A program made the translations under genes and the position numbers. The notes beneath the pieces are model-generated. The model made no database searches, was not told the DNA's origin, and saw nothing but the letters and a program-made list of their open reading frames with translations. Positions 45,327-59,042 of a stretch of DNA of 64,000 nucleotides are shown here, piece by piece (the stretch's first letter is position 1; each line of letters opens with the position of its first letter). The stretch is from positions 176,444-240,443 of the IMG/VR virus record IMGVR_UViG_3300030108_006260. One strand, given 5' to 3'.

Positions 45327-46065
45327 ATGTTCAAAACTGGTGAAAACATCGGATCTTCTCGTGTTTTTGAGGNNNNNNNNNNAGACTTGTCAACAAGGAA
45401 GAGACTACAGAGGAAACCTAAAGGTTGCCTCTGATAACTTTCTAACTTCTAGTCGTGAAATTGACGTAAGTTGGCTTCCTGCTGCGGCCGAGAAGTACCA
45501 GATTTCTGGTAACATCAACGACTACATCATCAATGAGATTCCTATTGTAACAGTAGGTGTTCCTAACAGGAACCTAGATGAGTTCCCTTATGAAGAGGTA
45601 ACCTCGTTCAACGAAGAGATTGGTCGGATGGTTTACCAGACCTTCATTGGTAAGCCAACTCACATCGATCACGATAATAGGGACCCACGTAAGGCAAAGG
45701 GAGTCCACTTTGATGCACAGTTACAGAAGGTAGGCAACGTCTGGAAGATTGTCGTTCTTGCTGGATGGGACAAGACAAAAGACCCTGAACTAGCTCGTGC
45801 AATTCTAAACAGAACACGTACTGGGTTTTCCATGGGTGCCCTCGTTGGATACACTCAGTGTTCCTACCCTGGATGTGACGCAACTAGTCCGAACGGAAAG
45901 ATTGCATGCCGTCACCAGGACTACGGACGTGGGAAGGGTCGTGTATTAGAGTCGCATCTAGTATATGAAAGATGTTACCGCATAAATTATATTGAAACCA
46001 GCTCAGTAGCAGATCCAGCAGACCATACTGCCCACGATAGGTGGGTAAAGCCCTGGAATACTTGA
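45327..46065 (+). CDS. Prohead (capsid maturation) protease; 5' part crosses an assembly gap
   Basis: PNRNLDEF...YQTFIGKPTHIDHDN...AKG...GFSMG...ETSSVADPAD. Likely start ATG 45327 (MFKTGENIG); the frame change coincides with the N run. Confidence 0.7.
45373..45382. other. Assembly gap (10 N)
   Basis: Run of N. Confidence 1.
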
Positions 46066-46139
46066 TATTTTAATCATTATTACCTATATGTTTGATACTT
46101 TAGCGCTTTTGATGTAGGATTTTTAGTCTACAAAAGTAG

Positions 46140-46168
46140 TTGACAGCTTATCATAGCGTGTTAAGTAT
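46140..46168 (+). promoter_or_regulatory. Sigma70-like promoter for endonuclease 1
   Basis: TTGACA, 16 bp spacer, weak -10 TAAGTA, 7 bp before ATG 46175. Confidence 0.4.
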
Positions 46169-46174
46169 CAAGCT

Positions 46175-48412
46175 ATGATAAGTAAAATTCAGAAAGCCCA
46201 AGCTAGGGTAGATAAAGCTGTACCTGACAGGTACCAGGTTGTTGCTCTCGAAGGCGAAGGAAAGCAAAAGAAAGCTACCGTTTTAGATAAAGAAAGGGAA
46301 GTACAGTTTACTTATGACTTAGATTCCCTAGTCAAAAGACTCAGGAAAGATCCTTCCCTAATCTTTGGTAAGACCGACGAAGAAGACATAGAGGAAGTAC
46401 AGCAGCGTATAAATTCTATTGTTAGCTGGTACAAAGTAGTAAGAGTACTTCGTGAAGAAAAGTACCCAAGAGTTCATCTAACTGACCTTAGATGCGGAAC
46501 CACATTTAGTTACATCCTAAATCAATTTGTATCAAATCTTAAGAAGAACCCAGATAGAGTATTCTTTTCTGCTAAAAGAGGAAATGTACTTTCAGTAAGA
46601 AACAACAAAGACCCTTTGCTTTTTCAGGCACAAGAGAGACTGAAGGAGGCAGGAGGTAAAAATCTTAAAGTTATATCCTACGATACAGAGACTGATAAGG
46701 CAACTATTCTAGACGAGGAAACAGAAGCGATAGATTCTTTTTCCTTTAAACACCTTTTATCAAATCTTAGAAGAGGAACCTCTTCAGGTAGGATAGAGAG
46801 CCCCCTATCAAAAGCCAGGATAATTGAAACCCTTACGCCTGGCCGTTTTACTATAATAGAAGCATTTTCAGATCGTCTATCAGGTAAAACAATCGTTGTT
46901 ATTCGAGACAAAGAAACAGGAGTCCGGTATAGAAACCTACTTTCCTATATTAAGTCTGCTCTAGAGAAAGATCCCTCTTACGTATTTGGGAGAACTCAGG
47001 ATGAGATTAACGATATCAGGAAAAGCACGAACTTGGAGCGACACGGAGTCGAGTTTCCTCTTCAGTCGGATGAGATAAAGGAAAAAATGAAGAGGACGCT
47101 CCAAGAAAAGTATGGAGTGGATAACTACTCTCAGACAGATGATTACGTGGAGTCGTTCAGAAGAACGAGCCTAGATCGCTATGGTGTTGAACACCCTATG
47201 AAATCAGAAGAAATTAGAAAACGGGCGATATCTAATTCATTAGAAAAGTACGACGGGATACACCATACTCAACACCCAGATGTCGTGTCTAAGATCCGAT
47301 CCACGAACCAAGAAAGGTATGGTGTAGACACTCCTCTGGAATCAAAGGAGATACAAGAAAAAGCGCTTAAGTCCCTTGAGAAGAACTGGGGAGTGACCAA
47401 TCCCCAGTTGCACCCTGACATTAGGGAAAGGACGTTCCAGACCAACGTAGAGAACGGTCGATTCACTTTATACGAGGGAAAAACAGTCCCTCAGATTGCA
47501 GATGAAATTGGATCTGGGATAGGATATGTACGTAGGCTCATATCTCGATTAGGGTATGAAGGGGCCAAACCTCTTTTCGATCAATATGAGCCAGGAGGTT
47601 CAACCCTTACACGATATACAGTATCTTTGTTCGGGGACAGGGACAATCTAATTGTAGACCGTAAACTAGAGGGCACTTCCTTTCGTCCAGATCTCTGCTT
47701 CCCTGAAGCTAAGGTCATCGTAGAAGCAGACGGACTATACTGGCACAGTGAGGGATCTAAGACTGAATCGTGGAATCCTAACTCCACGTACCATAAGAGA
47801 AAGCTCAAAGCCTATGAAGATGAGGGATATCGTGCTCTCTTCTTCCGTAGCGATGAGATTTATGAGAAGCCCGAAATCGTCAGAAGTATCACACTGAATG
47901 CTCTTGGAGAAAACGAACGTAGAGTCTTTGCGCGCAAGTGCTCCATCCAAGAAATCAGCCCTGACTTCTTTGACAGAGTACATCTTATGGGCAAAGGATC
48001 GGGCAGATGTTACGGACTCGTTCTTGATGGTGAAGTTCAGGCCGGTATCCAGGTTAGGTGGGTCAAAAAGAAGGCAAAACTACTTGATGTAAGTAGATTT
48101 GCTACCGCACCTTCTACATCAGTTGTAGGAGGATGGTCTAGGCTCATCAAGCACGTCTCTAAAGTAGAGAAGCCGCACACTATTCAAACCTTCATCGACC
48201 GTAGGTACGGGACGGGAGCGCATCTATCTTCACAGGGGTGGGTAAAGAGGACAGAAGAACCTAGCTTCCGTTGGACCGATGGTATTATGTCCCTCCACCG
48301 CATGAAATTTCCTGGTAATACAGGGTATGAGAACGGGTTCTTTAAGATATGGGACTGTGGTCAGGCTAAATGGACGTTATCTTTACCCAGTGGACACCTC
48401 GACTCGAATTAG
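46175..48412 (+). CDS. Free-standing Hef-like homing endonuclease 1 (repeats + Vsr-like nuclease + GNAT/Mom-like domain)
   Basis: TNLERYGV-type repeats; FRPDLCFP...VEADGLYWHS nuclease; RVFARKC...HLMG...SRFAT...VVGG...WDCGQ C-domain. Confidence 0.75.
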   Translation: MISKIQKAQARVDKAVPDRYQVVALEGEGKQKKATVLDKEREVQFTYDLDSLVKRLRKDPSLIFGKTDEEDIEEVQQRINSIVSWYKVVRVLREEKYPRVHLTDLRCGTTFSYILNQFVSNLKKNPDRVFFSAKRGNVLSVRNNKDPLLFQAQERLKEAGGKNLKVISYDTETDKATILDEETEAIDSFSFKHLLSNLRRGTSSGRIESPLSKARIIETLTPGRFTIIEAFSDRLSGKTIVVIRDKETGVRYRNLLSYIKSALEKDPSYVFGRTQDEINDIRKSTNLERHGVEFPLQSDEIKEKMKRTLQEKYGVDNYSQTDDYVESFRRTSLDRYGVEHPMKSEEIRKRAISNSLEKYDGIHHTQHPDVVSKIRSTNQERYGVDTPLESKEIQEKALKSLEKNWGVTNPQLHPDIRERTFQTNVENGRFTLYEGKTVPQIADEIGSGIGYVRRLISRLGYEGAKPLFDQYEPGGSTLTRYTVSLFGDRDNLIVDRKLEGTSFRPDLCFPEAKVIVEADGLYWHSEGSKTESWNPNSTYHKRKLKAYEDEGYRALFFRSDEIYEKPEIVRSITLNALGENERRVFARKCSIQEISPDFFDRVHLMGKGSGRCYGLVLDGEVQAGIQVRWVKKKAKLLDVSRFATAPSTSVVGGWSRLIKHVSKVEKPHTIQTFIDRRYGTGAHLSSQGWVKRTEEPSFRWTDGIMSLHRMKFPGNTGYENGFFKIWDCGQAKWTLSLPSGHLDSN

Positions 48413-49193
48413 GCTACTGGTCCTTGCTCAACAGGACTTGTCTAAGGTAAAGAAGAATGACTGGATCACTGTGTATCACGGTACACCTTTATTCAGACTA
48501 CCGCAGCTTATCAATGGATTTGATGCTACTGCTTCGTGGAAACGAGACTATAGAGCAGGGAAACACCCAGGTCTTTTCGTTACTACGGACATGAATACTG
48601 CGAAGAGCTTCGGTGGTGGTGCTGTTATCGAGATCAAGGTTAGGGCCAAGAACCTTCATGGCACTGATTACAGCGGAGACATAGGTAGGGATCAGGAGAA
48701 AGAGGGTAAAGACCACGATTGGATCCGTAGAAAACACCCCGAAAGCTTCAGACCGTACCTAACCTATACCATGAATCAGGAACATGAGCCCCAGGCCCTG
48801 CTCAGGGGAATAGTTAAGCCTAGTCAAATTACTCGTGTATGGATAAAGAGGCATAAAACTAAGGAGTGGGAACAATTTACACGAGAACAGTTCCTTAAGA
48901 GACAGGAAGTATTCAACAAGCAGTACTCCAAAGAAGAAAAATTCCAGGATGCTGGAATAGATCTTTCTAGTCCTAAACTTAATCTCCGAGATTTTGTATC
49001 CGCCTACAGAAAGTTTCATGGTTCCCCAGGAAACGAGGACAGGACTATTGAAAAGCTTGTATTCTTTGGAAAGAAAGATCCTTCTCGTGTTCGAGAAATA
49101 CTATCCCAGATGAAATTTGGAGGATCTAGTCTTGGTGAGCGCGCAGTAGAGAACCTTCTACGCCAAGTTATGACACTTGTACGGTCTTCATAG
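48390..49193 (+). CDS. ADP-ribosyltransferase-fold protein
   Basis: TVYHGT, GLFVTTDMNTAKSFG, AVIEIKV, EHEPQAL; likely GTG start at 48390 (MDTSTRIRLLVLA). Confidence 0.6.
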   Translation: MDTSTRIRLLVLAQQDLSKVKKNDWITVYHGTPLFRLPQLINGFDATASWKRDYRAGKHPGLFVTTDMNTAKSFGGGAVIEIKVRAKNLHGTDYSGDIGRDQEKEGKDHDWIRRKHPESFRPYLTYTMNQEHEPQALLRGIVKPSQITRVWIKRHKTKEWEQFTREQFLKRQEVFNKQYSKEEKFQDAGIDLSSPKLNLRDFVSAYRKFHGSPGNEDRTIEKLVFFGKKDPSRVREILSQMKFGGSSLGERAVENLLRQVMTLVRSS

Positions 49194-49228
49194 GATGTAT
49201 CCTGATACCGTTTCCATACTAAGACAGT

Positions 49229-49606
49229 ATGTCAGAAACCCCAGGTACTTCTTTAACCCACGTAAAAGTGGGAGACAAGCTAATTGTAACCGCTTCCAAG
49301 CACTGGCAGCCTCCCTATAAAGTAGTCATTGTCTCCAAAGTCGGAAGAAACTGGCTTTACGTAAAAAACTATAGGGAGGGAATGGTTGTTTCAGAATTCT
49401 CTAAGGGAGACAGAGGATTTTCTAGGAAAGATGGACGACCTAAGGTTATTAATACGGGCAAAGCTCATACGATTGAGAAATACGAGTACGATCAGAAGTA
49501 CGCAAGCCTTCTGAAAAAGGCCCGAGGAATCCTATCATCACCTAACCCGAAGGTAAGTCTTGAAGACCTGAAGTCTTTTGTTTCTTCCGTTGAAGAAACT
49601 TCTTAA
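49229..49606 (+). CDS. Hypothetical protein (SH3/KOW-like)
   Basis: VKVGDKLIV...VSKVGRNWLYV. Confidence 0.55.
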   Translation: MSETPGTSLTHVKVGDKLIVTASKHWQPPYKVVIVSKVGRNWLYVKNYREGMVVSEFSKGDRGFSRKDGRPKVINTGKAHTIEKYEYDQKYASLLKKARGILSSPNPKVSLEDLKSFVSSVEETS

Positions 49607-49746
49607 GTTTGTAAAAAAACTATAAGTTTAGTCACTTAGATAAAAAACCTATTAGTGTTGTTATCTAAGTGCTGCACGTAGTGCATCGCTTTAGTCTTAG
49701 TAGTAACTTTATTGTTCCTACACCCCAAGAGCGAGTCTATTTCCTT

Positions 49747-50820
49747 ATGGTTTTCCCTTCAAATCACACAGAACTACGAAAGCGTCTCCTATTTATTGCA
49801 GAGGCTGTTACTGTAGGACCTTCGATTGTTCGAAGGATCAAGATGAAGTTGGAAGACGAGGGAGAGGAGTCCTTGTCTCGACGAGAGAAGGCTATCCTAA
49901 ATAGGGCCCGTAAGGTTCATGATAGACTCACGAGTGGTAACATCGACCCTACATCGGAGACGATGCCTGCCCCCGATAAAAAGAAAAACTACGAGCACTT
50001 CAGGGAAGCGCTTGAAGAAGCAGGCATTGAAGTAGATCGTATGTCAGTTCCTGACATGATTGATCTTGTCAAAAAGAGTGTAGAAAAAGATCCTCTGACA
50101 TCATCTGACCCCGTACGTAAGACGATGGGGTCCATTAGCAAGTTCAGGAAACTACTTCTTGTTCAGAAGATGGGTCTTCCTGCTGCTATTAAGGACCTAT
50201 CCGAAGCAAATGACGAGAACATGAGGAATACAGCTTCAAAACTGAAGCCTCTTGTCTCAAGTATCTTAGGTCCTGTAAGCTTACTTACAGACCAACTCCA
50301 GGATATTTTTGATATGCTGGACGGCATTGATGGTAGAGACACTAAGGTTATCCGTAAAGCGTACTCCATGCTAAAAGAGGTAGAGTCTACCTACCGCAAC
50401 TATGGATCTGACATAAACGAGCAGCTTGCACCCATTAAAAACAAGCATGAGAGAGCAGCACAGGAGATTACTAAGGTACTTCGTGTTCGCTACAAAGATG
50501 CTATGCAGGAAATGAGGGAAAAGGGAGCTTCCCCCGAGCAGGCAGCAGAAGGCGCAATGAGCCTTCCTGTTATTCGTAAGTTGAAGTCACAGGCAGAGAC
50601 AATGAAGGCTCTGGCGTCCGGTGTGGACTTCGTATTGCAGGAGTTCTCCCACAGGTTCGTAGAATCAATGAAAAGTTTCAAGGAACTAAAGTCTGACTTT
50701 AGTTCCTTGTTGGATAAAAATGTTTCAAAAGTAGCTTTTGTTCCGTCTTTATCCGAAAGATTACGTAAAGTGTCTAAAACATTAGTCACTTTGCGGTATT
50801 TATACAATACGTCACATTGA
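49747..50820 (+). CDS. Helical hypothetical protein, putative internal head protein
   Basis: ATG 49747; LRKRLLFIAE leader and C-terminal LSERLRKVS. Confidence 0.55.
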   Translation: MVFPSNHTELRKRLLFIAEAVTVGPSIVRRIKMKLEDEGEESLSRREKAILNRARKVHDRLTSGNIDPTSETMPAPDKKKNYEHFREALEEAGIEVDRMSVPDMIDLVKKSVEKDPLTSSDPVRKTMGSISKFRKLLLVQKMGLPAAIKDLSEANDENMRNTASKLKPLVSSILGPVSLLTDQLQDIFDMLDGIDGRDTKVIRKAYSMLKEVESTYRNYGSDINEQLAPIKNKHERAAQEITKVLRVRYKDAMQEMREKGASPEQAAEGAMSLPVIRKLKSQAETMKALASGVDFVLQEFSHRFVESMKSFKELKSDFSSLLDKNVSKVAFVPSLSERLRKVSKTLVTLRYLYNTSH

Positions 50821-50914
50821 GTCCCTCCGTGACTCGGGTCCTGGCAATGGTGCGAGGCCCCAAAACGCTCGGAGGCCCACTCCCCAGTTTACTGGGATAA
50901 AGGTCAAAGAAAAC

Positions 50915-51844
50915 ATGGCAAAGCAAGACGCAGCAGCCTTACGAGCAGCCCGACAGAAGCGAATCGCATCGCGGACAAAGGGCACACAGTCTAATCCCGC
51001 AACCAAGACCGCCGCACCCACCGAGAAAGCGCCTGCGACCGCTCCTTCGGTACTTACCGCAGCAGTTTTGGACCCTCAGTCCGTAACTAAGACTGCCGAA
51101 ATCGATCTCATCGGTTACGGCCAGGCCCAGGATCCTTTCTGGGTTGTCCTAGCTAACGGTCGTCCTGTAGCTGAGATTCGTCTCAGCGATCAGGAAGATC
51201 CCTCTGGGATCGCCAAGCTCTTCGTGGGAGAGCAGTACGCCGCAGGCGTACGTGAAGCTGCTAAGCAGTTTCCATTCTCTGAGGTTCTAGAAGGTGTTCG
51301 CGCCCGTCCCTACCAGGCATCGGTTGCCACGGATGACGCGTACCGCACCATCGAAGCCAAGCTTACCGAGAAGCACGATGTTGCTCTTCGTGAGGCAAAG
51401 GCAAACGTCAGAGACGACATGTCCAACATGTTGAACCTCGTAGTTCTTGCACAAAACAAGAACTTCCTCCGCGAGAATCCTCTCAAGGACGAGCTTTTCC
51501 GTCGCATGGCGTCGGCAGGCATCGAGGACAGCAGGGCAATCGCCCTTATTGAAGGAGCCTTCCAGGCCCGAGCACCTGAGCACTTCGAAATCTGCTTCAA
51601 GCAGGCTATGAAGTGGATGGATCTTACTCCTCAGGCTCTCGGTGAACTTGAGGAGCAGATTAAGGATCTCGGATACCGTCAGCCTGTTGCTGCCGCTTCT
51701 GATGAGATTCGTGCAGCTTCTGCTGCTGCCCCCTCAGGCTCTCATAACGTCCCTCTCTACACCCGTACCGCAGGTAGCAATGCTGCTTCCAGCGAGAAGG
51801 AAGACATGAGGGCTGCTATGGGATTTGGTCGCCGCCAAAACTAA
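50915..51844 (+). CDS. Putative capsid scaffold protein
   Basis: Ala-rich helical protein with strong codon bias, just upstream of decoration and capsid genes. Confidence 0.5.
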   Translation: MAKQDAAALRAARQKRIASRTKGTQSNPATKTAAPTEKAPATAPSVLTAAVLDPQSVTKTAEIDLIGYGQAQDPFWVVLANGRPVAEIRLSDQEDPSGIAKLFVGEQYAAGVREAAKQFPFSEVLEGVRARPYQASVATDDAYRTIEAKLTEKHDVALREAKANVRDDMSNMLNLVVLAQNKNFLRENPLKDELFRRMASAGIEDSRAIALIEGAFQARAPEHFEICFKQAMKWMDLTPQALGELEEQIKDLGYRQPVAAASDEIRAASAAAPSGSHNVPLYTRTAGSNAASSEKEDMRAAMGFGRRQN

Positions 51845-51876
51845 TAACCCAAGTCTATTTTTAGGAGAGACAAACA

Positions 51877-52587
51877 ATGGCATTCGATACAACCCGATCA
51901 TATTTCAATGATCTTCGTGAACGTCCCGTAGCTGATGGTGCTTCCGTCAGCGAAGAGGGACAGGTTCTTGTGTACGTTACTTCGGGATCCGGCTCCCTTG
52001 CTGTTCAGCCTTCGGCTGGTGCAGCTAACGAGCGTGTCGCTGGTTTCGCTATCACAGACGCCCTTAAGCTTGTTACCAAGTCTGTAGTCGAGGAGCTTGT
52101 CGTTCCCACCGGTGGTGGTACCGTCGACCTTCGCAACCAGGCACTCGTAACGGGTTCCACCCGTGCTTACGATGTCACCGCCGCTGGCGCTCTTGCTCTT
52201 ACCGGAGCAGCACCCGCAGCTGGTGAGTACCAGCCTAACCTTGCCCAGGGTACAGTAACGTTCAACGCTGCTGAAGCTGGTAACACCGTTCGCGTCTTCT
52301 ATCGCTACAGCCCAACGCTTGAAGAGATTCTTGCTACGGACCACGAGCGTCCCATCAACAACCGTGCGCAGGACTTCTTCTCCTCGGTTTCCGTTGGCTG
52401 TCTAGACGGCGAAATCTTTACGACAATGTATGACACGAGTCAGACATACGCCGTAGGAGCTACCATTTACTCCGGCGCTGGTGGTCTATGCACCGCTGCC
52501 GCAGGCGGAACAGCTCTTGGCTTCGTATCCCAGGAGCCTTCCGTCGCTGACGGTCTTCTTGGTGTGAAGTACGCTAACCTTAGCTGA
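51877..52587 (+). CDS. Head decoration / minor capsid protein
   Basis: Strong RBS, Ala/Gly/Thr-rich beta protein, TTMYDTSQTYAVGATIY...G.V...P (beta-tulip-like). Confidence 0.65.
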   Translation: MAFDTTRSYFNDLRERPVADGASVSEEGQVLVYVTSGSGSLAVQPSAGAANERVAGFAITDALKLVTKSVVEELVVPTGGGTVDLRNQALVTGSTRAYDVTAAGALALTGAAPAAGEYQPNLAQGTVTFNAAEAGNTVRVFYRYSPTLEEILATDHERPINNRAQDFFSSVSVGCLDGEIFTTMYDTSQTYAVGATIYSGAGGLCTAAAGGTALGFVSQEPSVADGLLGVKYANLS

Positions 52588-52593
52588 TCTAGC

Positions 52594-52649
52594 GCCGCAA
52601 TCGCGGCTTTTTGGGAATGGCCTCGCTTTATGCGGGGCTTTTCTCTTTT
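52594..52649 (+). terminator. Two tandem rho-independent terminators
   Basis: GCCGC-aatc-GCGGC-TTTTT and GCCTCGC-tttat-GCGGGGC-TTTTCTCTTTT. Confidence 0.75.
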
Positions 52650-54174
52650 AAACCACACGTTCCCACCTGGCCTGACCACAGTCCCATATCTTAACCAGTC
52701 CCTCCTCATACCCAGATTCTTTAGGGTATCGCATACGATGAAATGTAGACCTCAAGTCTGTCCATGCAAAGGAAGTATTTTCACTGAGTCTTTTCCACCC
52801 TAGACTTTTAAGGTATTTTCCGTCTCCATACCTTCTATCTACGTAGGTTCGAATAGAGTTCGGAGACTCTTTATTGATCACATGTTTGATTAGCTTACTA
52901 AATCCGCCTACAACAGAGTATCCAGGTGCAGTACAGAATCTAGAGATGTCCATAAATTTTTTATTTCTTGTAATCCAACGAACTCTGATTCCTGCCACAA
53001 CCTTTCCATTGTGATAAAGGCCGTATCTTCTACCCATACCCCTACCCATCAAGTGGTTGTTCTGGAAGAACTCTACGGGGGCCTCATCTACCGTTGTGTT
53101 CCTGGCGTATACTCTAATGGACTTCCCTAGTTTATTGTCTATAATTGATTTTACTACATGAGGAGAATTTCGTATCTCGTCACCTCTGAAGAATAGGCTA
53201 TTCACTCCTACTTCATCGTACAATACCTTTTTATCTCTGTGATATTCTGATGAGCAATTTAGTTCACTATGCCAGTATAGTCCGTCGCACTCTACTACTA
53301 GGTTTCTTTCGGGTATGTAGAAGTCCGGCTTGAAAGATGTACCAGAGAGCTGCTTGTCTCTCACCACATTAAATCCTTTGAAGAAAGGAAGAACCATTTC
53401 TTCTAATGACGATCCTTTCTTTGGAGATGATACAATCGCATGGATTTGTTCTCTGGAGTAGTTTCTTTTAAGGAAATAAAGGTGACTCTTAGAGTACCCT
53501 GTACTTTCTGCTACGTCATCCACTTTTTTTCCCAATATACTTACAGGTTTACGAGGATTCCACGTCTCGTTTACGAGCATGCTTCTCAGCCTGTATGATT
53601 CTTCGGATACAGTTACATCCGACACATTATCAGTGACTGTAACATAGAACCTATTTTTGGATCTCCTAACGCTCTTTACTGAGACACGGTCCTTTGAAAT
53701 TAGGTCATATTCCTTTTGCCATTTGTCCCTAAGACTATCTTCGTCAGGTATAAACCTGTGGCTTTTATTTTTGGAAGATTTTACGAAGCTCTTCCAATCG
53801 CATTCAAAGTAGTACTTGTGCAACGCGTCATAGAACCTGAACCGGGGGTTATCGCCTTCTTCTCCTAGGCTCTCTTTAATGGAATACCTCAAATGGTCCG
53901 TAGAACTTTCTTTAATGTAGGCATTGTGCCTAGCAATTATGTCTACTGCGTTCTTTGGCCAAGTTCTATCAGGATTAGACTTTAATGCCCTATAAAAAGA
54001 ATCCCAGGCTACCTTTATTGTGTAGTCTTCGTACCTGTCTCTTATCGTAACCGTGTGTTTCGTCCGTATTCTTTGTCCCTCACGAACTTCTTCGCTGTCC
54101 ACTTGTTTGATAACAAACCTTTGGCGAGACACAGCATCAACTTTTAGCTGTAGATCTTCTATTCTACCAGTCAT
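52648..54174 (-). CDS. Free-standing Hef-like homing endonuclease 2 (antisense in the head operon)
   Basis: FKPDFYIP...VECDGLYWHS; RVYARNT...HLMG...SRFCT...VVGGFSKL...WDCGQ. Confidence 0.75.
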   Translation of the reverse strand: MTGRIEDLQLKVDAVSRQRFVIKQVDSEEVREGQRIRTKHTVTIRDRYEDYTIKVAWDSFYRALKSNPDRTWPKNAVDIIARHNAYIKESSTDHLRYSIKESLGEEGDNPRFRFYDALHKYYFECDWKSFVKSSKNKSHRFIPDEDSLRDKWQKEYDLISKDRVSVKSVRRSKNRFYVTVTDNVSDVTVSEESYRLRSMLVNETWNPRKPVSILGKKVDDVAESTGYSKSHLYFLKRNYSREQIHAIVSSPKKGSSLEEMVLPFFKGFNVVRDKQLSGTSFKPDFYIPERNLVVECDGLYWHSELNCSSEYHRDKKVLYDEVGVNSLFFRGDEIRNSPHVVKSIIDNKLGKSIRVYARNTTVDEAPVEFFQNNHLMGRGMGRRYGLYHNGKVVAGIRVRWITRNKKFMDISRFCTAPGYSVVGGFSKLIKHVINKESPNSIRTYVDRRYGDGKYLKSLGWKRLSENTSFAWTDLRSTFHRMRYPKESGYEEGLVKIWDCGQARWERVV

Positions 54175-54182
54175 GTCATTCT

Positions 54183-54210
54183 ACTATAGCTAGGGTTTAC
54201 TTGCTATCAA
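54183..54210 (-). promoter_or_regulatory. Sigma70-like promoter for endonuclease 2
   Basis: TTGATA-16-TATAGT, 8 bp before ATG 54174. Confidence 0.5.
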
Positions 54211-54266
54211 GCAATAACTCCATAAAACTTATACTTTCTTTGTTTATATCCTGGATGGAATAATCT

Positions 54267-54593
54267 ATGACTGACACTCCAATAGTTGCCCCTCCTTCCC
54301 CTCAATATGTGCCTTCCGTAGACGGTATTAATCTCCCGTACTCGGGGCATGCAGCCAGGAGACGAGCTTCCGTAGTGAACGGATCGTCTGTCATCGACAA
54401 CGAGCTTAACGTCACTGTCTCTTTAAATGTAGATTCTTCTGTAGGACCAAATCCAGAGACAGTCTACATCATAAGAAGGCTAAAGTACGGAAGCTTTGTT
54501 CCAAGTGCAGCTATGCATGTAGTCGGTCTTTCGTTCATTGAGAACTATTCTTTCGCCTTTAGCAGCGGAAAAAGGCCATATAGATTCTATTGA
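54267..54593 (+). CDS. Hypothetical protein
   Basis: 108-aa ORF. Confidence 0.5.
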   Translation: MTDTPIVAPPSPQYVPSVDGINLPYSGHAARRRASVVNGSSVIDNELNVTVSLNVDSSVGPNPETVYIIRRLKYGSFVPSAAMHVVGLSFIENYSFAFSSGKRPYRFY

Positions 54594-54597
54594 TTAT

Positions 54598-54635
54598 GTT
54601 TTGACCTATAATTTTATAAAATTATAGGTCAAAAC
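54598..54635. repeat. Perfect 38-bp palindrome
   Basis: GTTTTGACCTATAATTTTA|TAAAATTATAGGTCAAAAC. Confidence 0.95.
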
Positions 54636-54835
54636 CGTTAAAAGAACTTTTTCTTTTATCCTTATTCTATAAACGTTCCAAGTCTTATACCATTTCTGGT
54701 AACTTATCACCTCATGTGATCCAGAAGCTAGTCTTTAGGAGTGGCATCTCCTCCCAACAAAGGTCAAGTCTGATTTAGCGAAATAATTCGCACATAAAAT
54801 CAAAACTTTTCTAATAAACGAGAGAAAATAAACAA

Positions 54836-55957
54836 ATGTCAAGCCCATACGCTTCTGGTCCCGGTGTTAAAGTAATTCGAGGAACCGATATTCCTGCTAC
54901 CTCGCAGGACGGTCTTCGCGGAGGAATCCGCACCGCTGGCCGCACCATGGTTTCTGATGGACCCGCTTTCGGATCTAACGGAGAAATCAACGCTTCTTCT
55001 AAGCGCGAACTCATGCAGTCGATTGGTCACGTTGTGCACCAGTCTCGTCAGAGTGTCATGACGCGCCAAGCTTCTGCTGAGGTTCAGCAGCAGCGCCTTG
55101 CAAGCCTTCGTGAGGCTTACGCCGACAAGAGCGGAACCAAGTTCCAGGTTCTTGGTGAGGTTATCTCCGAGGAAATCTGGGAGACCCTTGGTCGTGAAGG
55201 TTTTTCCCGTCGTCTCCTTTCCGTTATGCCCCTCGCTAAGGGACAGACCGGTCGAGTAAAGGTACGTCGTAAGGATGTTGTTGCTTATCAGGTCACCACT
55301 GACGTGAAGATCACCGAGCAGCGCATTCGTCAGCCCTACGTATATCCTCCCGAGTTCTACCTCGGTGCCCAGATCCTCATCGAGGACAAGGAAATCGAGC
55401 AGGCATCCACTGACCTCCTTGACGCTAAGTTCCAGGACGGTCTTGAGGCTATCCTTCGTCGTGAGGACCTTATCACCCGCGCTCTTATGACTCGTGCAGC
55501 AACGACGTTCAACGACCTCGTTCTCTTCACCACGTTCAACCCGAGCGTTCTTACAACCCTCCGTACCCAGGTCAACCGCTGGGGTACCCCGGCCGCTACC
55601 ATGGTCATCGCTTTCGACATCTGGGATGACATCATCGCAGACGCCGACTTCGTTGCATGGTGGGACCAGGTCCACAAGCATGAGTTGATCCTTGAGGGTC
55701 GTCTTGGTAGCATGCTCGGAATGGAAATCATCACGGATGGTTACCGCTACGACACCCTCCAGGTTCTTGAGCCTGGTGAGGTCTTCGTTACCGCTTCTCC
55801 TGTTACCGTTGGTTCCATCGTTCAGCGTAAGGAACTCGACAGCCGCGCAATCGACCAGTACAACCTTGGTCGTCCTGCTCGTGGTTGGTTCATGGAGCAG
55901 ATCCAGGGACAGGTGATCGTCAACGGCCGCGCCGTCGACCGTGGTATCCGTGTCTGA
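54836..55957 (+). CDS. Major capsid protein (HK97 fold)
   Basis: 373 aa, strong codon bias, REGFSRRLL, VYPPEF, EAILRRED, GRLGSMLGMEII, RGWFM; followed by a strong terminator. Confidence 0.85.
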   Translation: MSSPYASGPGVKVIRGTDIPATSQDGLRGGIRTAGRTMVSDGPAFGSNGEINASSKRELMQSIGHVVHQSRQSVMTRQASAEVQQQRLASLREAYADKSGTKFQVLGEVISEEIWETLGREGFSRRLLSVMPLAKGQTGRVKVRRKDVVAYQVTTDVKITEQRIRQPYVYPPEFYLGAQILIEDKEIEQASTDLLDAKFQDGLEAILRREDLITRALMTRAATTFNDLVLFTTFNPSVLTTLRTQVNRWGTPAATMVIAFDIWDDIIADADFVAWWDQVHKHELILEGRLGSMLGMEIITDGYRYDTLQVLEPGEVFVTASPVTVGSIVQRKELDSRAIDQYNLGRPARGWFMEQIQGQVIVNGRAVDRGIRV

Positions 55958-55980
55958 TAAGTAGACGCTCTTTTGAGTTG

Positions 55981-56013
55981 AAAAGGCCCAGGTCTCTTGA
56001 CTTGGGCCTTTTT
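55981..56013 (+). terminator. Rho-independent terminator after MCP
   Basis: AAAAGGCCCAGGTC-tctt-GACTTGGGCCTTTTT. Confidence 0.85.
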
Positions 56014-56025
56014 CAATTGTATAGT
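55997..56025 (+). promoter_or_regulatory. Sigma70-like promoter for endonuclease 3, overlapping the MCP terminator
   Basis: TTGACT-17-TATAGT, 9 bp before ATG 56035. Confidence 0.6.
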
Positions 56026-56034
56026 GACCTGTCG

Positions 56035-57549
56035 ATGACCAAGGTGTCTCAGGAGTATGTTCTTCGTAGACTCTCGGAAGGAGCATCGTTAACCCTCATT
56101 GCTCGTGAACTCAAAGTCAGCCCTTCTACCCTAAAAAGGAAGGTAGACTTACCCAAGCAGGGTACCTTAGAATGGTATCGTATCAAGTTTCCGGACGCTG
56201 GGGTCGAGTCAGTGGAAGAAGGGAAGCTGATCCTTTCTGAAGGACGGAGAGTGTCACCGGGTGAGCTACGTCAGGAGAGTTCTTTCATATCTAATAAGGA
56301 CCGTCTACTTCAGCGGTGGGCCCGTGGGGACAGTATTAGTACCATCGCTAAAGAGCTAAAGACTTCAAGGACTAGACTAGCGCCCCGTCTAGGAATACCT
56401 CCTATAGGTACAGTCGACTATTACTCTTTTCTGCTTTCACTTCTTACTTCCTCAATTAAGGTGAAGGAACTGATCCCTGGAGATGTGGTTCAACTCGAAT
56501 GCAGGGACGTGAAGAGGGGTGTACAATTCACAGCGCCTGCCTGGTGGGTTGTTTCTAGGTTACGTAAAGATCCTGACTACACTTTCTTTCCAAGCCAAGA
56601 CGAAAGAAAGAGCAAGATGATTGCAAACGGTACGATTTCTACGATCAGCGGGATGACACTGCCTGCCTACGCTGAACAGGTCGGGGCCTCCTACGCTACT
56701 GTACACAAGAGGCTGTCTTTAGTAGGGGAAGAGAACGCTATTCGTTCTTTTGACGGGTACTCCACCAGGGAAAGCACCCTAGAGTCTATGGTGTCCTCTT
56801 GGGTGGAGGACGTAGGCTGTTCTTTCGTGCGTAATAACAAGCTAGAGGGAACATCGTACCTCCCTGACCTCGTTGTGCATTCTAGGCGGCTGGTTATTGA
56901 ATGTGATGGTCTCTACTGGCACTCAGAAGCTCAAAAGGAAAAGAACTATCATCGAGACAAGAAGCTAACATACCAGAACCTTGGGTATAAATCAATCTTT
57001 CTTAGGGAAGATGAATTGCTCAAGTCGCCTGACATATGTCGAAGTATTATACTTAATCACCTAGGGTCTAACAGAAGGGTGTACGCTAGAAAGACCACTG
57101 TCTCCTCAGGGGGAAGAGATTTTATCTCGCAAAATCACTTGATGGGAAAGGGGAAGGGTACAACATGGTCCCTCATTTCAGGAGATGACATCGTTGCTGC
57201 TATGCAAGTTCGGTGGGTATCCAGAGATAAAGGTATACTTGACATCTCTAGGTTCTGTTCTTCTCCTGGTGTTACTGTGGTAGGGGGATTTTCTAAGCTG
57301 ATAAAGCATGTCACAGAAGAAATGAAGCCTAATTCTATACAGAATTTCATAGACCTGCGCTACGGGTCGGGCAGCTACCTGCGTGGGATGGGGTGGAAGT
57401 CTCACAGAACTTACCTATCATTCAGGTGGACAGACTGTAGAGGTAACACGTTCCATAGAATGAGGTACCCAGGTAAAACTGGATATGAACATGGTCTTTT
57501 GAAAATATGGGACTGTGGACAAGCCAAGTGGACTTTAGACCTGTCCTAG
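56035..57549 (+). CDS. Free-standing Hef-like homing endonuclease 3 (HTH + Vsr-like + GNAT/Mom-like)
   Basis: Two HTHs (SLTLIARELKVSPSTL; SISTIAKELKTS), YLPDLVV...IECDGLYWHS, RVYARKT...WDCGQAKW; likely start ATG 56035. Confidence 0.75.
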   Translation: MTKVSQEYVLRRLSEGASLTLIARELKVSPSTLKRKVDLPKQGTLEWYRIKFPDAGVESVEEGKLILSEGRRVSPGELRQESSFISNKDRLLQRWARGDSISTIAKELKTSRTRLAPRLGIPPIGTVDYYSFLLSLLTSSIKVKELIPGDVVQLECRDVKRGVQFTAPAWWVVSRLRKDPDYTFFPSQDERKSKMIANGTISTISGMTLPAYAEQVGASYATVHKRLSLVGEENAIRSFDGYSTRESTLESMVSSWVEDVGCSFVRNNKLEGTSYLPDLVVHSRRLVIECDGLYWHSEAQKEKNYHRDKKLTYQNLGYKSIFLREDELLKSPDICRSIILNHLGSNRRVYARKTTVSSGGRDFISQNHLMGKGKGTTWSLISGDDIVAAMQVRWVSRDKGILDISRFCSSPGVTVVGGFSKLIKHVTEEMKPNSIQNFIDLRYGSGSYLRGMGWKSHRTYLSFRWTDCRGNTFHRMRYPGKTGYEHGLLKIWDCGQAKWTLDLS

Positions 57550-57596
57550 ACTTATATCCATGTAAACGTACTATACACCATAATATTACCTTATAG

Positions 57597-57629
57597 GAGG
57601 TGCCCACTTTTGGGGGCGCCTATTTCTTT
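57597..57629 (+). terminator. Possible terminator
   Basis: GGTGCCC...GGGCGCC followed by TATTTCTTT. Confidence 0.4.
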
Positions 57630-57710
57630 GCCTATAATAGGACACTATACACGCATAGGTAACTACCTAATAACAGGTTATATTTTTGTGCCTTCTTATC
57701 TAAGTATACT

Positions 57711-57926
57711 ATGAGAGATATCAAAGAAAGACTTCTACGCATAGGTCTTGAGATCAGGTCCTCCTTGGATGCCCGGTCTGTAGCGGAGGAACTATTTTCC
57801 GCTCATGCACTAATGCAAGAATCTCTCGATAAGAGAGACCCTACTTCCTTTGCCTCTGCATTTAGAGACGCAAAGAAGTCACTTTCTAGGTTAAGAAGAG
57901 TCCTTAGGCTGAACAGCAGACCCTGA
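57711..57926 (+). CDS. Hypothetical protein (putative internal head protein)
   Basis: MRDIKERLLRIG leader. Confidence 0.55.
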   Translation: MRDIKERLLRIGLEIRSSLDARSVAEELFSAHALMQESLDKRDPTSFASAFRDAKKSLSRLRRVLRLNSRP

Positions 57927-57969
57927 TCCTCTAGGCTGTCTATTATCTCGTTACGGATTAAAAATTTAA

Positions 57970-58326
57970 ATGGAAAAAAGTATTGCAGAAAGACTGCGCC
58001 AGGTGTCCAAAAACATCGACAAACTGGCCCAAGTAAAAGAGATAGTGGAATCCAGCATAGGTCTTAGCCCCCAGGAGCAGATATGTGCCGCAGCATCTAT
58101 TGGCGCAGAGTATATTGCTGCTATGACAGGAAACCAGGATGAATCTGGGCTGATATATCGTGCTTACGAAGAAATACTCGCGTCACTATCACAGTCCCCC
58201 GCTATAGAAGAGATGCTACAGTGGAGCCGTGTTCCCCTTACTAAAGAAGCTTCATACAAAGAAGACCTTGATGATGCCTGGGTAGGGTTTAGGCTGGCTC
58301 TCCTTTCTGCTGGGAGGTCAAAATGA
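57970..58326 (+). CDS. Hypothetical protein (putative internal head protein)
   Basis: MEKSIAERLRQVS leader. Confidence 0.55.
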   Translation: MEKSIAERLRQVSKNIDKLAQVKEIVESSIGLSPQEQICAAASIGAEYIAAMTGNQDESGLIYRAYEEILASLSQSPAIEEMLQWSRVPLTKEASYKEDLDDAWVGFRLALLSAGRSK

Positions 58327-59042
58327 GTTTTTATAGCAGGATACTGGCTGTAGCAGGAATTAAATCAGCTGCTGCTAAGAAAAAGAAGACTACCAAGAAG
58401 TCGCCTAAGAAGACGCCTAAGAAGTCGCCTAAGAAGACTACCAAGAAAACAACTCCTTCTGTGGAGGATGCGTTTTACGCTCTACGCACCTGCTTGCACA
58501 GTGACCTTGGAAAAGGGACTGGATCGAGAGAGATGCGCCTCCTAGATCGTATAAAGTACGCTTTAGAGGTAGAGGGGTATAAGCTAACCACCTCTACTAA
58601 TGAACCAGGGTCAATGCCCAAGACACCTAGTAGACTAAGTTCTTCCACTCACTTTGTAGCTAGCGGTGGTATGTGTACTCTTATAAGAGGATCTGCTCCT
58701 GAGGGATTAGACATCAATGCTGTAGTATCTCTTTCCGACTTGTTTCGTAGTAAGCAGTGCTACAAGTGCACCATAGACCCATCTGATAACACTAACTCCA
58801 GGTCTCGTGGTGCAAACATGGCGCTTCCTAAGCCAGTTACCTGGCATAAGCTGCAAAAGTATGGGCTCTCTGTTGAGAATGTACTTGATGATGAGGGTAA
58901 AGTGCTACTAAAGAAGTACACTATCGAAGGAGTGAGTAGTTACACTGTAGATAGTCATACATTTTTTATGTCAAATAAAGAAAAGTTCCGCCGATGGATG
59001 GACGGACTTGATAGGTCAATCTCTAACTACCTAGAAAAGTAA
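58323..59042 (+). CDS. Protein with histone H1-like (S/T)PKK repeats
   Basis: KKKKTTKKSPKKTPKKSPKKTTKKTTP after leader YSRILAVAGIKSAA. Confidence 0.55.
   Translation: MSFYSRILAVAGIKSAAAKKKKTTKKSPKKTPKKSPKKTTKKTTPSVEDAFYALRTCLHSDLGKGTGSREMRLLDRIKYALEVEGYKLTTSTNEPGSMPKTPSRLSSSTHFVASGGMCTLIRGSAPEGLDINAVVSLSDLFRSKQCYKCTIDPSDNTNSRSRGANMALPKPVTWHKLQKYGLSVENVLDDEGKVLLKKYTIEGVSSYTVDSHTFFMSNKEKFRRWMDGLDRSISNYLEK

What the first reader, a model, noticed from the sequence alone, without database searches (positions are those of the whole stretch)
46175..57549. Three paralogous nuclease+GNAT-like genes with variable-copy N-terminal repeats in the capsid operon
Seen: 46175(+), 52648(-) and 56035(+) share a Vsr-like PD...E.DGLYWHS domain and a C-terminal RV(Y/F)AR...HLMG...SRF...VVGG.S.L...WDCGQ domain. 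Their N-termini carry about 4, 3 and 1 copies of a 50-65 aa repeat (e.g. ATVLDKEREVQFTYDLDSLVKRLRKDP; VTIRDRYEDYTIKVAWDSFYRALKSNP; LECRDVKRGVQFTAPAWWVVSRLRKDP), plus ERYGV repeats or HTHs. Each follows a conserved head gene (protease, decoration, MCP). Inference: mobile endonucleases with modular recognition arrays; the Mom/GNAT-like domain could modify DNA for self-protection, giving a one-gene restriction-modification-like element.
Basis: partly seen in the sequence, partly recalled or inferred. Interest (0 to 1): 0.65.

Follow-up and report, generated by a model that had tools for sequence, protein, structure and literature searches.

The report
Hef-like homing endonucleases with Mom-like domain
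Three genes in the head-gene region of a marine jumbo phage are free-standing "Hef-like" homing endonucleases, a known family of selfish DNA-cutting genes. Each joins a Vsr-type nuclease to a Mom-like acyltransferase-fold domain and a variable array of small DNA-binding-type modules; the role of the acyltransferase part has never been tested.

Summary
ORFs 46175-48412(+), 52648-54174(-) and 56035-57549(+) share a roughly 270-residue core and carry 4, 3 and 1 copies of a roughly 65-residue N-terminal unit. A fourth paralog with 5 units lies outside the window.

The core is a Vsr/EDxHD nuclease: its profile hits I-Bth0305I at E 1.8e-8. It is fused rigidly to a GNAT-fold domain (AF2 pLDDT 95). 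Phage Mu Mom is the top Foldseek hit, and the residues aligned to Mom H48, R101, D139 and R141 are invariant in 57 homologs.

PHROGs and deposited phage annotations call this family "Hef-like homing endonuclease". Iyer et al. 2021 already described jumbo-phage Mom domains fused to REase-fold nucleases as restriction-modification-like. PA5oct, their example with five such enzymes, has exactly five matches to this core.

Relatives with 82-88% identical major capsid protein (MCP) have the three intergenic sites empty, partly filled, filled, or holding a decayed copy. Copies cluster by site rather than by genome, which is typical of free-standing homing genes.

The repeat unit folds as alpha-beta3-alpha. 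It has no Pfam family and weakly resembles cysteine-less DUF723/DUF4379 modules.

Verdict: a new member of a known kind. Whether the Mom-like domain modifies DNA is untested.

The parts
46175..48412 (+). HEF1, 745 aa, a Hef-like homing endonuclease downstream of the head maturation protease gene (site A)
   Evidence: phrog_3339 'homing endonuclease' E 6.6e-57. A positional ortholog at 54% identity is present in L007. The site is empty in L002, L003 and L005.
46181..47005 (+). HEF1 array of four alpha-beta3-alpha units (residues 3-277)
   Evidence: An independent HMM finds 4 domains. AF2 model of unit 1 has pLDDT 88.
47006..47470 (+). HEF1 six 23-residue 'YGV' repeats (DUF7487 type)
   Evidence: Pfam DUF7487 E 1.2e-27. 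The period of 23 residues was read.
47600..47908 (+). HEF1 Vsr/EDxHD-type nuclease domain. A short putative HTH lies just before it, at about 47504-47590.
   Evidence: The family profile hits I-Bth0305I (3r3p) at E 1.8e-8 and Vsr at 3e-4. The catalytic D, E, H and E residues are invariant.
47909..48409 (+). HEF1 C-terminal GNAT-fold, Mom-like domain
   Evidence: Homologous to the modelled HEF2 domain.
52648..54174 (-). HEF2, 508 aa, a Hef-like homing endonuclease between a virion structural gene and the MCP block, on the antisense strand (site B)
   Evidence: phrog_3339 E 3e-44. Copies in the same place and orientation occur in L007 and L010. The site is empty in L002, L003 and L005.
53542..54165 (-). 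HEF2 array of three units (residues 4-211); the third is marginal in the independent test
53119..53418 (-). HEF2 nuclease domain (residues 253-352). A putative HTH lies at about 53452-53532.
   Evidence: AF2 model m5f18c4a4e5dc, pLDDT 95; profile hit to 3r3p.
52651..53118 (-). HEF2 GNAT-fold, Mom-like domain (residues 353-508). H374, R412, S426, D446 and R448 align to Mom H48, R101, S114, D139 and R141.
   Evidence: Foldseek top hit is Mom 8bv8 at E 1.5e-6. VIA Z is 11-12.6 to GNATs. hhalign to the Mom profile gives E 4e-4, scoring 31.4 against a shuffle maximum of 26.6.
56035..57549 (+). HEF3, 504 aa, a Hef-like homing endonuclease downstream of the major capsid protein gene and its terminator (site C)
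   Evidence: phrog_3339 E 3.2e-40. Orthologs in L003, L005 and L007 form a clade (98). The site is empty in L002 and L004, and holds a broken copy in L006.
56047..56394 (+). HEF3 two resolvase-type HTH motifs
   Evidence: Pfam HTH_7 E 1.2e-10, two stretches.
56413..56604 (+). HEF3 single alpha-beta3-alpha unit
   Evidence: Independent HMM i-E 8e-8.
56773..57546 (+). HEF3 nuclease domain (to 57075) plus GNAT-fold domain (57076-57546)
   Evidence: Alignment to HEF2.
55990..56025 (+). Terminator-like hairpin after the MCP gene, overlapping a sigma-70-like promoter (TTGACT, 17 nt, TATAGT) that ends 9 nt before the HEF3 ATG
   Evidence: consensus matches only.
54183..54210 (-). Sigma-70-like promoter (TTGATA, 16 nt, TATAGT) ending 8 nt before the HEF2 ATG
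   Evidence: consensus match only.

Best explanation
These are free-standing homing endonuclease genes of the Hef-like family, sitting in intergenic gaps of the head module of a marine jumbo phage.

Architecture. Each protein has a modular N-terminal DNA-recognition region, built from 1-5 alpha-beta3-alpha units plus 'YGV' repeats or resolvase-type HTHs. A short HTH follows, then a Vsr/EDxHD-type nuclease, then a rigidly attached GNAT-fold domain related to phage Mu Mom.

Inferred mechanism.
1. During co-infection the nuclease cuts a relative that lacks the gene, in or near the adjacent conserved head gene.
2. Recombinational repair copies the endonuclease gene, and flanking markers, into the cut genome.
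3. Each paralog is an old lineage tied to one site.
4. The Mom-like domain is most likely an active acyl- or aminoacyl-transferase acting on a DNA base at or near the recognition site. This would give the carrier genome immunity to its own nuclease, like a restriction-modification system.

What is shown and what is inferred. Shown: the family, the folds, the conserved residues, and the presence/absence and site-specific phylogeny. Inferred: cleavage, homing, DNA binding by the units, and any modification. I put the modification step alone at about 0.35.
For: Family.
- phrog_3339 and phrog_559 'homing endonuclease', E 1e-36 to 1e-57.
- 363 phage records match the core; annotations include 'Hef-like homing endonuclease' and 'nuclease/acetyltransferase'.
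- A review states that Hef of phage U5 cleaves nrdB (PMC2988022).

Nuclease.
- Profile hit to I-Bth0305I (3r3p) at E 1.8e-8 and to Vsr.
- D284, E295, H302 and E333 are invariant in 57 of 57 homologs.

GNAT domain.
- Model pLDDT 95, pTM 0.89.
- Mom is the top Foldseek hit; Z is 11-12.6 to GNATs.
- hhalign to the Mom profile gives E 4e-4 over 126 columns. The score beats 100 of 100 block shuffles.
- The equivalents of Mom H48, R101, D139 and R141 are 57/57; the S114 equivalent is 50/57.
- R101 is Mom-specific within GNATs (PMC7261163).

Mobility.
- L002 lacks all three genes. L003 and L005 have site C only. L007 has all three. L006 has a broken copy.
- Site A and site C copies form clades, with support 99 and 98.
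- No intron RNA was found.

Prior prediction of the R-M-like role: PMC7824862. PA5oct has five copies of this core.
Against: No cleavage, homing or modification has been measured for these proteins.

The C-domain is not detected by Pfam Mom or phrog_1384. The hhalign probability is only 35%. Mom is nearly tied with other GNATs in Foldseek and is absent from the top 50 entries by Z.

Mom's HTH-like insertion, which is essential in Mu Mom (PMC13219725), is missing.

Self-protection by modification is hard to reconcile with homing during co-infection, because both genomes would see both activities.

Positional orthologs are only 38-54% identical while flanking genes are 55-87% identical. Recent homing among the sampled genomes is therefore not shown. 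Public marine contigs showed no endonuclease-free variant of this phage.
Confidence: 0.7

Rival explanations
1. They are single-chain restriction-modification-like weapons, not homing elements. The nuclease attacks host or superinfecting-phage DNA, while the Mom-like domain broadly protects the phage genome. Several paralogs would give several specificities.
For: This is the published reading of the same fusion in jumbo phages (PMC7824862). Many paralogs occur per genome: 4 here and 5 in PA5oct. Promoter-like sites of host type precede three of the genes, which would allow early expression.
Against: The genes sit at the same intergenic points next to conserved head genes and are sporadically present among close relatives. 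Their clades are site-specific and one copy is decayed. That is the pattern of homing genes. The review on T4-related phages describes Hef as a homing endonuclease that cleaves nrdB (PMC2988022). The two roles are not exclusive.
Confidence: 0.2
2. The GNAT-fold domain is non-catalytic. It would serve as a scaffold for dimerisation or DNA clamping, which a double-strand cut needs. Self-immunity would come from sequence differences at the occupied site, as in other free-standing homing endonucleases.
For: There is no Pfam GNAT or Mom hit. Mom's essential insertion is absent. Mu Mom is a dimer (PMC7261163), and the I-Bth0305I paper links that enzyme's dimerisation to its catalytic activity (PMC3239194). 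I-Bth0305I works without any GNAT domain.
Against: The residues aligned to Mom's catalytic and substrate residues are invariant in 57 diverse homologs. They are at least as conserved as the nuclease active site, which is unusual for a mere scaffold. The homodimer prediction gave no verdict.
Confidence: 0.25
3. Modify-then-cut: the Mom-like domain acylates a base in the target, and the Vsr-type nuclease, whose relatives recognise a distorted base pair, nicks next to the lesion. Modification would then be part of the attack, not of immunity.
For: Vsr recognises a T:G mismatch by intercalation (PMC3239194). The two domains are predicted to be rigidly coupled (pTM 0.89). No separate immunity logic would be needed during co-infection.
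Against: This is pure inference. I-Bth0305I cuts fully paired DNA without a modifying domain. Known Mom activity protects DNA from nucleases.
Confidence: 0.08

Closest known systems
Hef (phage U5) and Hef-like free-standing homing endonucleases of T4-related, ViI-like, Campylobacter and jumbo phages (phrog_3339, phrog_559)
   Same: The same two-domain core, nuclease plus C-domain, is matched end to end. They are free-standing genes between conserved phage genes, often with several copies per genome: LIMEstone1 has four (PMC3296691).
   Different: Core identity to deposited phages is only 23-34%. The N-terminal alpha-beta3-alpha arrays gave no tblastn match in 50,697 phage records. Their relatives are in marine and other metagenomes.
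I-Bth0305I, the prototype of the EDxHD (Vsr-fold) homing endonuclease family (PDB 3r3p)
   Same: Homologous nuclease domain (E 1.8e-8) with conserved catalytic residues. Modular DNA-binding region plus HTH on the N-terminal side of the nuclease (PMC3239194).
   Different: I-Bth0305I is intron-encoded, uses NUMOD motifs, and ends with the nuclease. Here the genes are free-standing (no Rfam intron), use different modules, and carry an extra C-terminal GNAT-fold domain.
Phage Mu Mom (PF25680; PDB 8bv8), a Gly-tRNA-dependent DNA adenine N6 modifying GNAT
   Same: GNAT fold, and the top Foldseek hit. The equivalents of H48, R101, S114, D139 and R141 are aligned and conserved.
   Different: Not detected by the Pfam Mom or phrog_1384 HMMs. 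It lacks the essential HTH-like insertion and the C-terminal tail. It is fused to a nuclease and to sequence-recognition modules. The donor and the acceptor are unknown.
Jumbo-phage 'Mom domain fused to REase-fold endoDNase' of Iyer et al. 2021
   Same: The same family. PA5oct, cited there as having five momylating enzymes, has exactly five matches to this core.
   Different: That paper reads them as restriction-modification-like defence. The comparative data here add the homing-type distribution.
DUF723/DUF4379 'treble-clef zinc finger' modules of phage nucleases (T5orf172, HNH, RNase_T fusions)
   Same: The unit's shape and language-model features point to these clusters: TM 0.60-0.67 over about 60 residues and a feature score of 0.88. 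Both occur as tandem arrays in nuclease-associated proteins.
   Different: No HMM match and no conserved cysteines. No solved structure matches clearly: best Foldseek E is 0.08, to dsRNA-binding domains of the same alpha-beta3-alpha topology, and best Z is 4.6.

Membership tests
Hef-like homing endonucleases (phrog_3339 / phrog_559) | Family HMM match covering both the nuclease and the C-terminal domain | tested here: met
   E 3e-40 to 7e-57 for all three, with profile coverage to the C-terminal end. tblastn of the core hits genes annotated as Hef-like.
Hef-like homing endonucleases (phrog_3339 / phrog_559) | Free-standing gene between conserved phage genes, sporadic among close relatives | tested here: met
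   The three sites are empty, filled or decayed in L002-L010. There are no intron RNA matches.
Hef-like homing endonucleases (phrog_3339 / phrog_559) | Site-specific cleavage of the gene-less allele and preferential inheritance in crosses | not testable with these tools
   Needs enzyme assays and mixed infections.
EDxHD / Vsr-fold homing endonucleases (I-Bth0305I type) | Nuclease domain homologous to the I-Bth0305I and Vsr catalytic domain | tested here: met
   Profile A2 against the PDB: 3r3p at 1.8e-8, 1cw0 at 3.4e-4, 1vsr at 4e-3. The individual proteins score below the Pfam Vsr and DUF559 cut-offs, except HEF3 for DUF559.
EDxHD / Vsr-fold homing endonucleases (I-Bth0305I type) | Conserved catalytic acid, His and acid residues | tested here: met
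   D284, E295, H302 and E333 (HEF2 numbering) are 57/57. D297 is D in 51 and N in 6; I-Bth0305I has N at this position.
EDxHD / Vsr-fold homing endonucleases (I-Bth0305I type) | N-terminal DNA-binding region with the nuclease at the C-terminus | tested here: not met
   The DNA-binding-type modules are N-terminal, but the nuclease is followed by a GNAT-fold domain of about 155 residues. This is an extended architecture.
Mom family (Pfam PF25680) | Match to the family HMM above the gathering score | tested here: not met
   No PF25680 or phrog_1384 hit, even at E 10. Mu Mom itself scores 2e-75.
Mom family (Pfam PF25680) | GNAT fold | tested here: met
   138 Foldseek matches at E <= 1e-3, with 8bv8 (Mom) first at 1.5e-6. 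VIA Z is 11-12.6, rmsd 2.4-3.1 A, over 120-130 residues.
Mom family (Pfam PF25680) | Mom-essential residues H48, R101, S114, D139 and R141 (H58, R111, S124, D149 and R151 in the 2026 numbering) | tested here: met
   They align to H374, R412, S426, D446 and R448 in hhalign and are conserved 57/57, with S at 50/57. Caveat: the alignment probability is 35%, although the score exceeds 100 of 100 block shuffles.
Mom family (Pfam PF25680) | HTH-like insertion (about 35 residues after the aligned His), essential for momylation | tested here: not met
   Only 29 residues follow the aligned His. The model shows one short helix and two strands there. The requirement is from PMC13219725.
Mom family (Pfam PF25680) | Gly-tRNA-dependent formation of N6-carbamoylmethyl-adenine in dsDNA | not testable with these tools
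   Biochemistry is needed.
DUF723 / DUF4379 treble-clef modules (for the repeat unit) | Family HMM match | tested here: not met
   1 of 56 units matches, at E 0.11. There is no hit in the whole genome.
DUF723 / DUF4379 treble-clef modules (for the repeat unit) | Zinc-chelating Cys/His set | tested here: not met
   Alignment A4 has no conserved Cys or His column; the only nearly invariant column is an Asp.
DUF723 / DUF4379 treble-clef modules (for the repeat unit) | Shared fold | tested here: inconclusive
   TM 0.60-0.67 to Atlas clusters carrying DUF723/DUF4379, with feature-based hits to the same families. The domain is short, and no solved structure supports the match.

The most novel reading that the evidence does not exclude
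Hef-type homing endonucleases are bifunctional. A programmable array of alpha-beta3-alpha units, each reading a few base pairs, directs both a Vsr-type nuclease and a Mom-like DNA acyl- or aminoacyl-transferase to one site. A single polypeptide would then be a self-immunising, restriction-modification-like homing element, and the unit array would be a new modular DNA-recognition code.
Probability: 0.2. Interest if true: 0.75.

Novelty: new member of a known kind. Interest (0 to 1): 0.4.

Why it matters
The family is widespread: 363 deposited phage genomes and more than 800 metagenomic clusters.

It was shown in 2026 that Mu Mom uses Gly-tRNA to modify adenine. The Hef C-domain keeps the aligned catalytic residues, so a direct experiment is now obvious: does a homing endonuclease also write a DNA mark?

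If it does, that would explain how free-standing homing genes avoid cutting their own genome. It would also add a sequence-directed DNA-acylating enzyme to the toolbox.

The variable unit arrays are a candidate modular DNA-binding scaffold. As it stands, this locus is a well-behaved example of a known kind.

Tried and rejected
- Megablast of the region against phage records found no match. The phage is known only from marine metagenomes.
- phmmer of the core against the PDB found no hit; only the profile search worked.
- hhalign of the family profile against the single Mom sequence, and in global mode, gave nothing. Only local profile-profile alignment with a Mom family alignment gave the match.
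- The Pfam Mom, Pfam GNAT and phrog Mom-like HMMs did not detect the C-domain.
- tblastn of the HEF1 repeat region against phages found no match. The word-based protein search of that region returned only the protein itself.
- Foldseek and VIA-align of the unit against solved structures gave nothing significant.
- The DUF723 HMM found nothing in the genome.
- The homodimer prediction of the nuclease+GNAT core gave no verdict, score 0.00. This is not evidence either way.
- I laid contigs from four marine runs on 52500-58400. All pieces were 100% identical and fragmentary. There was no joint that skips HEF2 or HEF3, so no endonuclease-free variant was seen. The single joint listed has a 23-letter side and is not credible.
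- Rfam found no group I or II intron or other RNA family around the genes.
- The neighbours of the fourth paralog are unannotated, so they add nothing on target choice.
- I considered recent intragenomic duplication as the origin of the paralogs and rejected it, because copies group by site across genomes.

Full report
WHAT IS THERE

The window is the last 64 kb of a single 240,443-bp viral contig. IMG/VR classes the contig as a provirus, and CheckV estimates it 62% complete.

The region of the finding lies in the head module. PHROGs assigns a portal gene (41607-45320), a head maturation protease (45340-46065), a virion structural protein (51877-52587) and the major head protein (54836-55957). 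The MCP is only about 33% identical to those of PaBG- and Lu11-type jumbo phages. Near-identical DNA occurs in marine metagenomes of at least four studies.

- HEF1, 46175-48412(+), 745 aa.
- HEF2, 52648-54174(-), 508 aa.
- HEF3, 56035-57549(+), 504 aa. The longer TTG frame from 55885 overlaps the MCP gene and is unlikely to be the true start.

A fourth paralog of 622 aa lies outside the window, at genome C1:105952-107820(-).

THE CORE: NUCLEASE PLUS GNAT-FOLD DOMAIN

PHROGs places all three proteins in phrog_3339 and phrog_559, both described as homing endonuclease, at E 1e-36 to 1e-57. The profile matches run to the C-terminus. Pfam gives only sub-threshold Vsr and DUF559 hits.

A word-based search found 826 relatives, mostly metagenomic and mostly carrying DUF7487. 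A profile of 57 of them hits the catalytic domain of I-Bth0305I (PDB 3r3p) at E 1.8e-8, and Vsr itself at 3e-4. I-Bth0305I is the prototype of the EDxHD homing endonuclease family. The acid, His and acid residues that align with the I-Bth0305I and Vsr active site are invariant.

AlphaFold2 of HEF2 residues 240-508 with this alignment gave pLDDT 95 and pTM 0.89, so the two domains are predicted to form one rigid body.

Residues 358-508 are a GNAT fold:
- Foldseek finds 138 PDB chains at E <= 1e-3. Phage Mu Mom (8bv8) is first at 1.5e-6, nearly tied with ordinary acetyltransferases.
- VIA-align gives Z 11-12.6 (rmsd 2.4-3.1 A, 120-130 residues) to many GNATs.

IS THE C-DOMAIN MOM-LIKE?

The Pfam Mom HMM (PF25680) and phrog_1384 do not detect the domain.

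I took the Mu mom gene from AF083977, collected its relatives and aligned 28 of them. Local profile-profile alignment of the Hef C-domain against this Mom profile gives E 4e-4 over 126 columns, at probability 35%. The score of 31.4 exceeds all 100 block-shuffled Mom profiles, which have mean 17.5, sd 3.2 and maximum 26.6.

The alignment pairs five motifs in order, giving these equivalents (HEF2 residue to Mom residue):
- H374 to H48.
- R412 to R101.
- S426 to S114.
- D446 and R448 to D139 and R141.

These are the residues that two papers found important for Mom activity (PMC7261163; PMC13219725, which numbers them 10 higher). R101 is described there as Mom-specific within the GNAT superfamily. 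In the 57-sequence alignment, H374, R412, D446 and R448 are invariant and S426 is present in 50. They are also kept in all positional orthologs.

Against membership, the HTH-like insertion that is essential in Mu Mom is absent. Only 29 residues follow the aligned His, and they are modelled as a short helix and two strands.

My reading is that the C-domain is a GNAT-fold domain specifically related to Mom, probably catalytic, but not a member of the Pfam Mom family. Its donor and acceptor are unknown.

ALREADY KNOWN

tblastn of the core finds 363 deposited phage genomes, including Campylobacter, Vibrio, Acinetobacter, Klebsiella, Dickeya and T4-like coliphages. The genes are annotated there as 'Hef-like homing endonuclease', 'homing endonuclease' or 'putative nuclease/acetyltransferase protein'.

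Published points that bear on this family:
- A review describes Hef of phage U5 as an endonuclease that cleaves nrdB (PMC2988022). The original paper, Sandegren et al. 2005, is not held.
- The I-Bth0305I paper already included the Hef type in the Vsr-like family (PMC3239194).
- LIMEstone1 carries four free-standing Hef-like genes (PMC3296691).
- Iyer et al. [quoted passage not shown] They predict that momylation protects the phage while the nuclease attacks other DNA, and they cite PA5oct as having five such enzymes (PMC7824862).

PA5oct has exactly five matches to the present core, so it is the same family. It remains untested.

MOBILITY EVIDENCE

Nine IMG/VR loci encode close relatives of the MCP; in eight of them the best segment is 82-88% identical, and L008 is more distant at 47%. 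Their synteny with the window is:

| Locus | Site A (after protease) | Site B (before MCP block, antisense) | Site C (after MCP) |
|---|---|---|---|
| L002 | empty | empty | empty |
| L003, L005 | empty | empty | occupied |
| L004 | empty | other genes, about 6 kb | empty |
| L006 | empty | empty | copy broken across three frames |
| L007 | occupied | occupied | occupied |
| L010 | not covered by the locus | occupied | two tandem copies |
| L009 (same arrangement as L010 where they overlap) | not covered | not covered | two tandem copies |

L007 has all three sites occupied in the same orientations as the window.

A maximum-likelihood tree of the cores groups the site C copies of the window, L003, L005 and L007 (support 98). 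It groups the site A copies of the window and L007, together with metagenomic relatives (support 99). The paralogs of one genome do not group together. The paralogs are therefore old, site-bound lineages, not recent duplicates.

Positional orthologs are only 38-54% identical while flanking genes are 55-87% identical. Recent transfer among the sampled genomes is thus not demonstrated.

No intron or other RNA family flanks the genes. Contigs from four further marine runs are 100% identical to the window and show no endonuclease-free variant.

THE N-TERMINAL MODULES

An HMM of the units finds 4, 3, 1 and 5 copies in HEF1, HEF2, HEF3 and HEF4. It finds 1-3 copies in most metagenomic relatives, sometimes at the C-terminus.

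An HMM built only from units of other proteins recovers 4, 3 and 1 copies. The third HEF2 copy is at the noise level, scoring 8.1 against a shuffled maximum of 8.2.

Units within one protein are at most 32% identical. Copy number differs even between positional orthologs:
- Site A: 4 against 3.
- Site B: 3 against 2 and 2.
- Site C: 1 in all.

An AF2 model of one unit, from an alignment of 56 units, has pLDDT 88 and the order helix, three strands, helix. No solved structure matches clearly. The best Foldseek hits are dsRNA-binding domains of the same topology at E 0.08, and the best Z is 4.6.

ESM-Atlas searches point to clusters carrying DUF723/DUF4379 ('treble-clef zinc finger'), joined to T5orf172, HNH or RNase_T domains. 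This holds by features (0.88) and by shape (TM 0.60-0.67). Three results argue against membership of those families:
- The DUF723 HMM does not match the units.
- The units have no conserved cysteines.
- Pfam DUF7487 does not cover them.

I take the unit to be an unclassified, probably DNA-binding module, possibly a zinc-less relative of DUF723. That is a lead, not a result.

HEF1 additionally has six exact 23-residue 'YGV' repeats (DUF7487). HEF3 has two resolvase-type HTH motifs. All three have a short HTH-like stretch just before the nuclease.

GENE CONTEXT

The MCP gene ends in a conserved hairpin-plus-T-run, both in the window and in the relatives. HEF3 begins after it.

The two best sigma-70-like matches that precede a gene in 45800-58200 end 8 and 9 nt before the ATGs of HEF2 and HEF3. 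A TTGACA/TAAGTAT pair ends 6 nt before the HEF1 ATG. None of the three has a Shine-Dalgarno sequence.

Terminator-like hairpins follow the structural gene, the MCP gene and HEF3. The promoter scan as a whole is not enriched over shuffles (17 found against 15.1 expected), so this is only suggestive. It points to autonomous, perhaps leaderless, cassettes rather than members of the late capsid operon.

HOW IT MOST LIKELY WORKS

Shown:
- Family membership.
- The two folds.
- Conserved active-site residues in both domains.
- The modular N-termini.
- The sporadic, site-specific distribution.

Inferred from what is established for Hef, I-Bth0305I and other free-standing phage homing endonucleases:
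- The N-terminal modules and the HTH position the nuclease on a site in or beside the neighbouring conserved head gene of a genome that lacks the insert.
- The cut is repaired from the carrier genome during co-infection.
- That repair copies the endonuclease gene and nearby markers into the cut genome.

Inferred from the conservation pattern and from Mom: the GNAT-fold domain transfers an acyl or aminoacyl group to a base in DNA bound by the same protein. The simplest purpose is immunity of the carrier genome. I give that step about 0.35.

The rivals are a non-catalytic scaffold role, a defence-type R-M role without homing, and a modify-then-cut mechanism. A homodimer prediction gave no verdict.

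VERDICT

Its functional inference matches a published but untested hypothesis.

This locus is a new member of a known family. Its modest new points are the unclassified variable unit arrays, the clear empty/occupied/decayed series at three head-module sites, and the mapping of Mom's catalytic residues onto the Hef C-domain.

Noticed in passing
window 41607-45320 (insert at about 42714-44084): The portal gene carries an in-frame insert of about 457 residues (residues 370-826) with Pfam Intein_splicing and LAGLIDADG_3 hits. The portals of the relatives align to residues 1-369 and 827-968 only. This is an intein with a homing endonuclease in the portal protein.
   Followed up: partly
genome C1:105952-107820 (-), outside the window (L012:5952-7820): A fourth Hef-like paralog of 622 aa with five N-terminal units. 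A near-identical protein is on record from Tara and NCBI (P0012). Its neighbours have no PHROG match; a DNA methyltransferase gene lies about 5 kb away at L012:12799-13680.
   Followed up: partly
L010:8754-11166 (also L009): In two relatives the MCP gene is split into three pieces in different frames. The first gap (9105-10000) encodes a LAGLIDADG_2 endonuclease. Rfam finds no group I intron there. Two Hef-like genes follow in tandem.
   Followed up: partly
L006:11562-12832: The site C Hef-like gene of this relative matches in three consecutive pieces in different frames. It is a decaying copy.
   Followed up: no
window 48327-49606: Two ORFs follow HEF1: one of 288 aa, whose start overlaps the HEF1 end by 86 nt, and one of 125 aa (phrog_3032, unknown function). 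Neither has a counterpart in the relatives' loci, and neither has a Pfam hit. They may be cargo or a separate insertion.
   Followed up: partly
window 46127-46175, 54174-54210, 55997-56037: Promoter-like -35/-10 pairs end only 6-9 nt before the ATG of HEF1, HEF2 and HEF3, and no Shine-Dalgarno sequence is present. This suggests leaderless transcripts made by host-type RNA polymerase.
   Followed up: no
L004:3700-9800: This relative has about 6 kb of other genes (seven ORFs) between the structural gene and the MCP gene, where the window has HEF2. Site B is a general insertion hotspot.
   Followed up: no
window 52500-58400: Contigs from marine metagenome runs of several studies match this stretch with no differences at all. 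The same phage genotype is geographically or temporally widespread.
   Followed up: partly
window 54839-56086 (-): A 415-codon open frame lies antisense to the MCP gene. The relatives have shorter antisense frames at the same place. It is probably a by-product of MCP codon usage.
   Followed up: no
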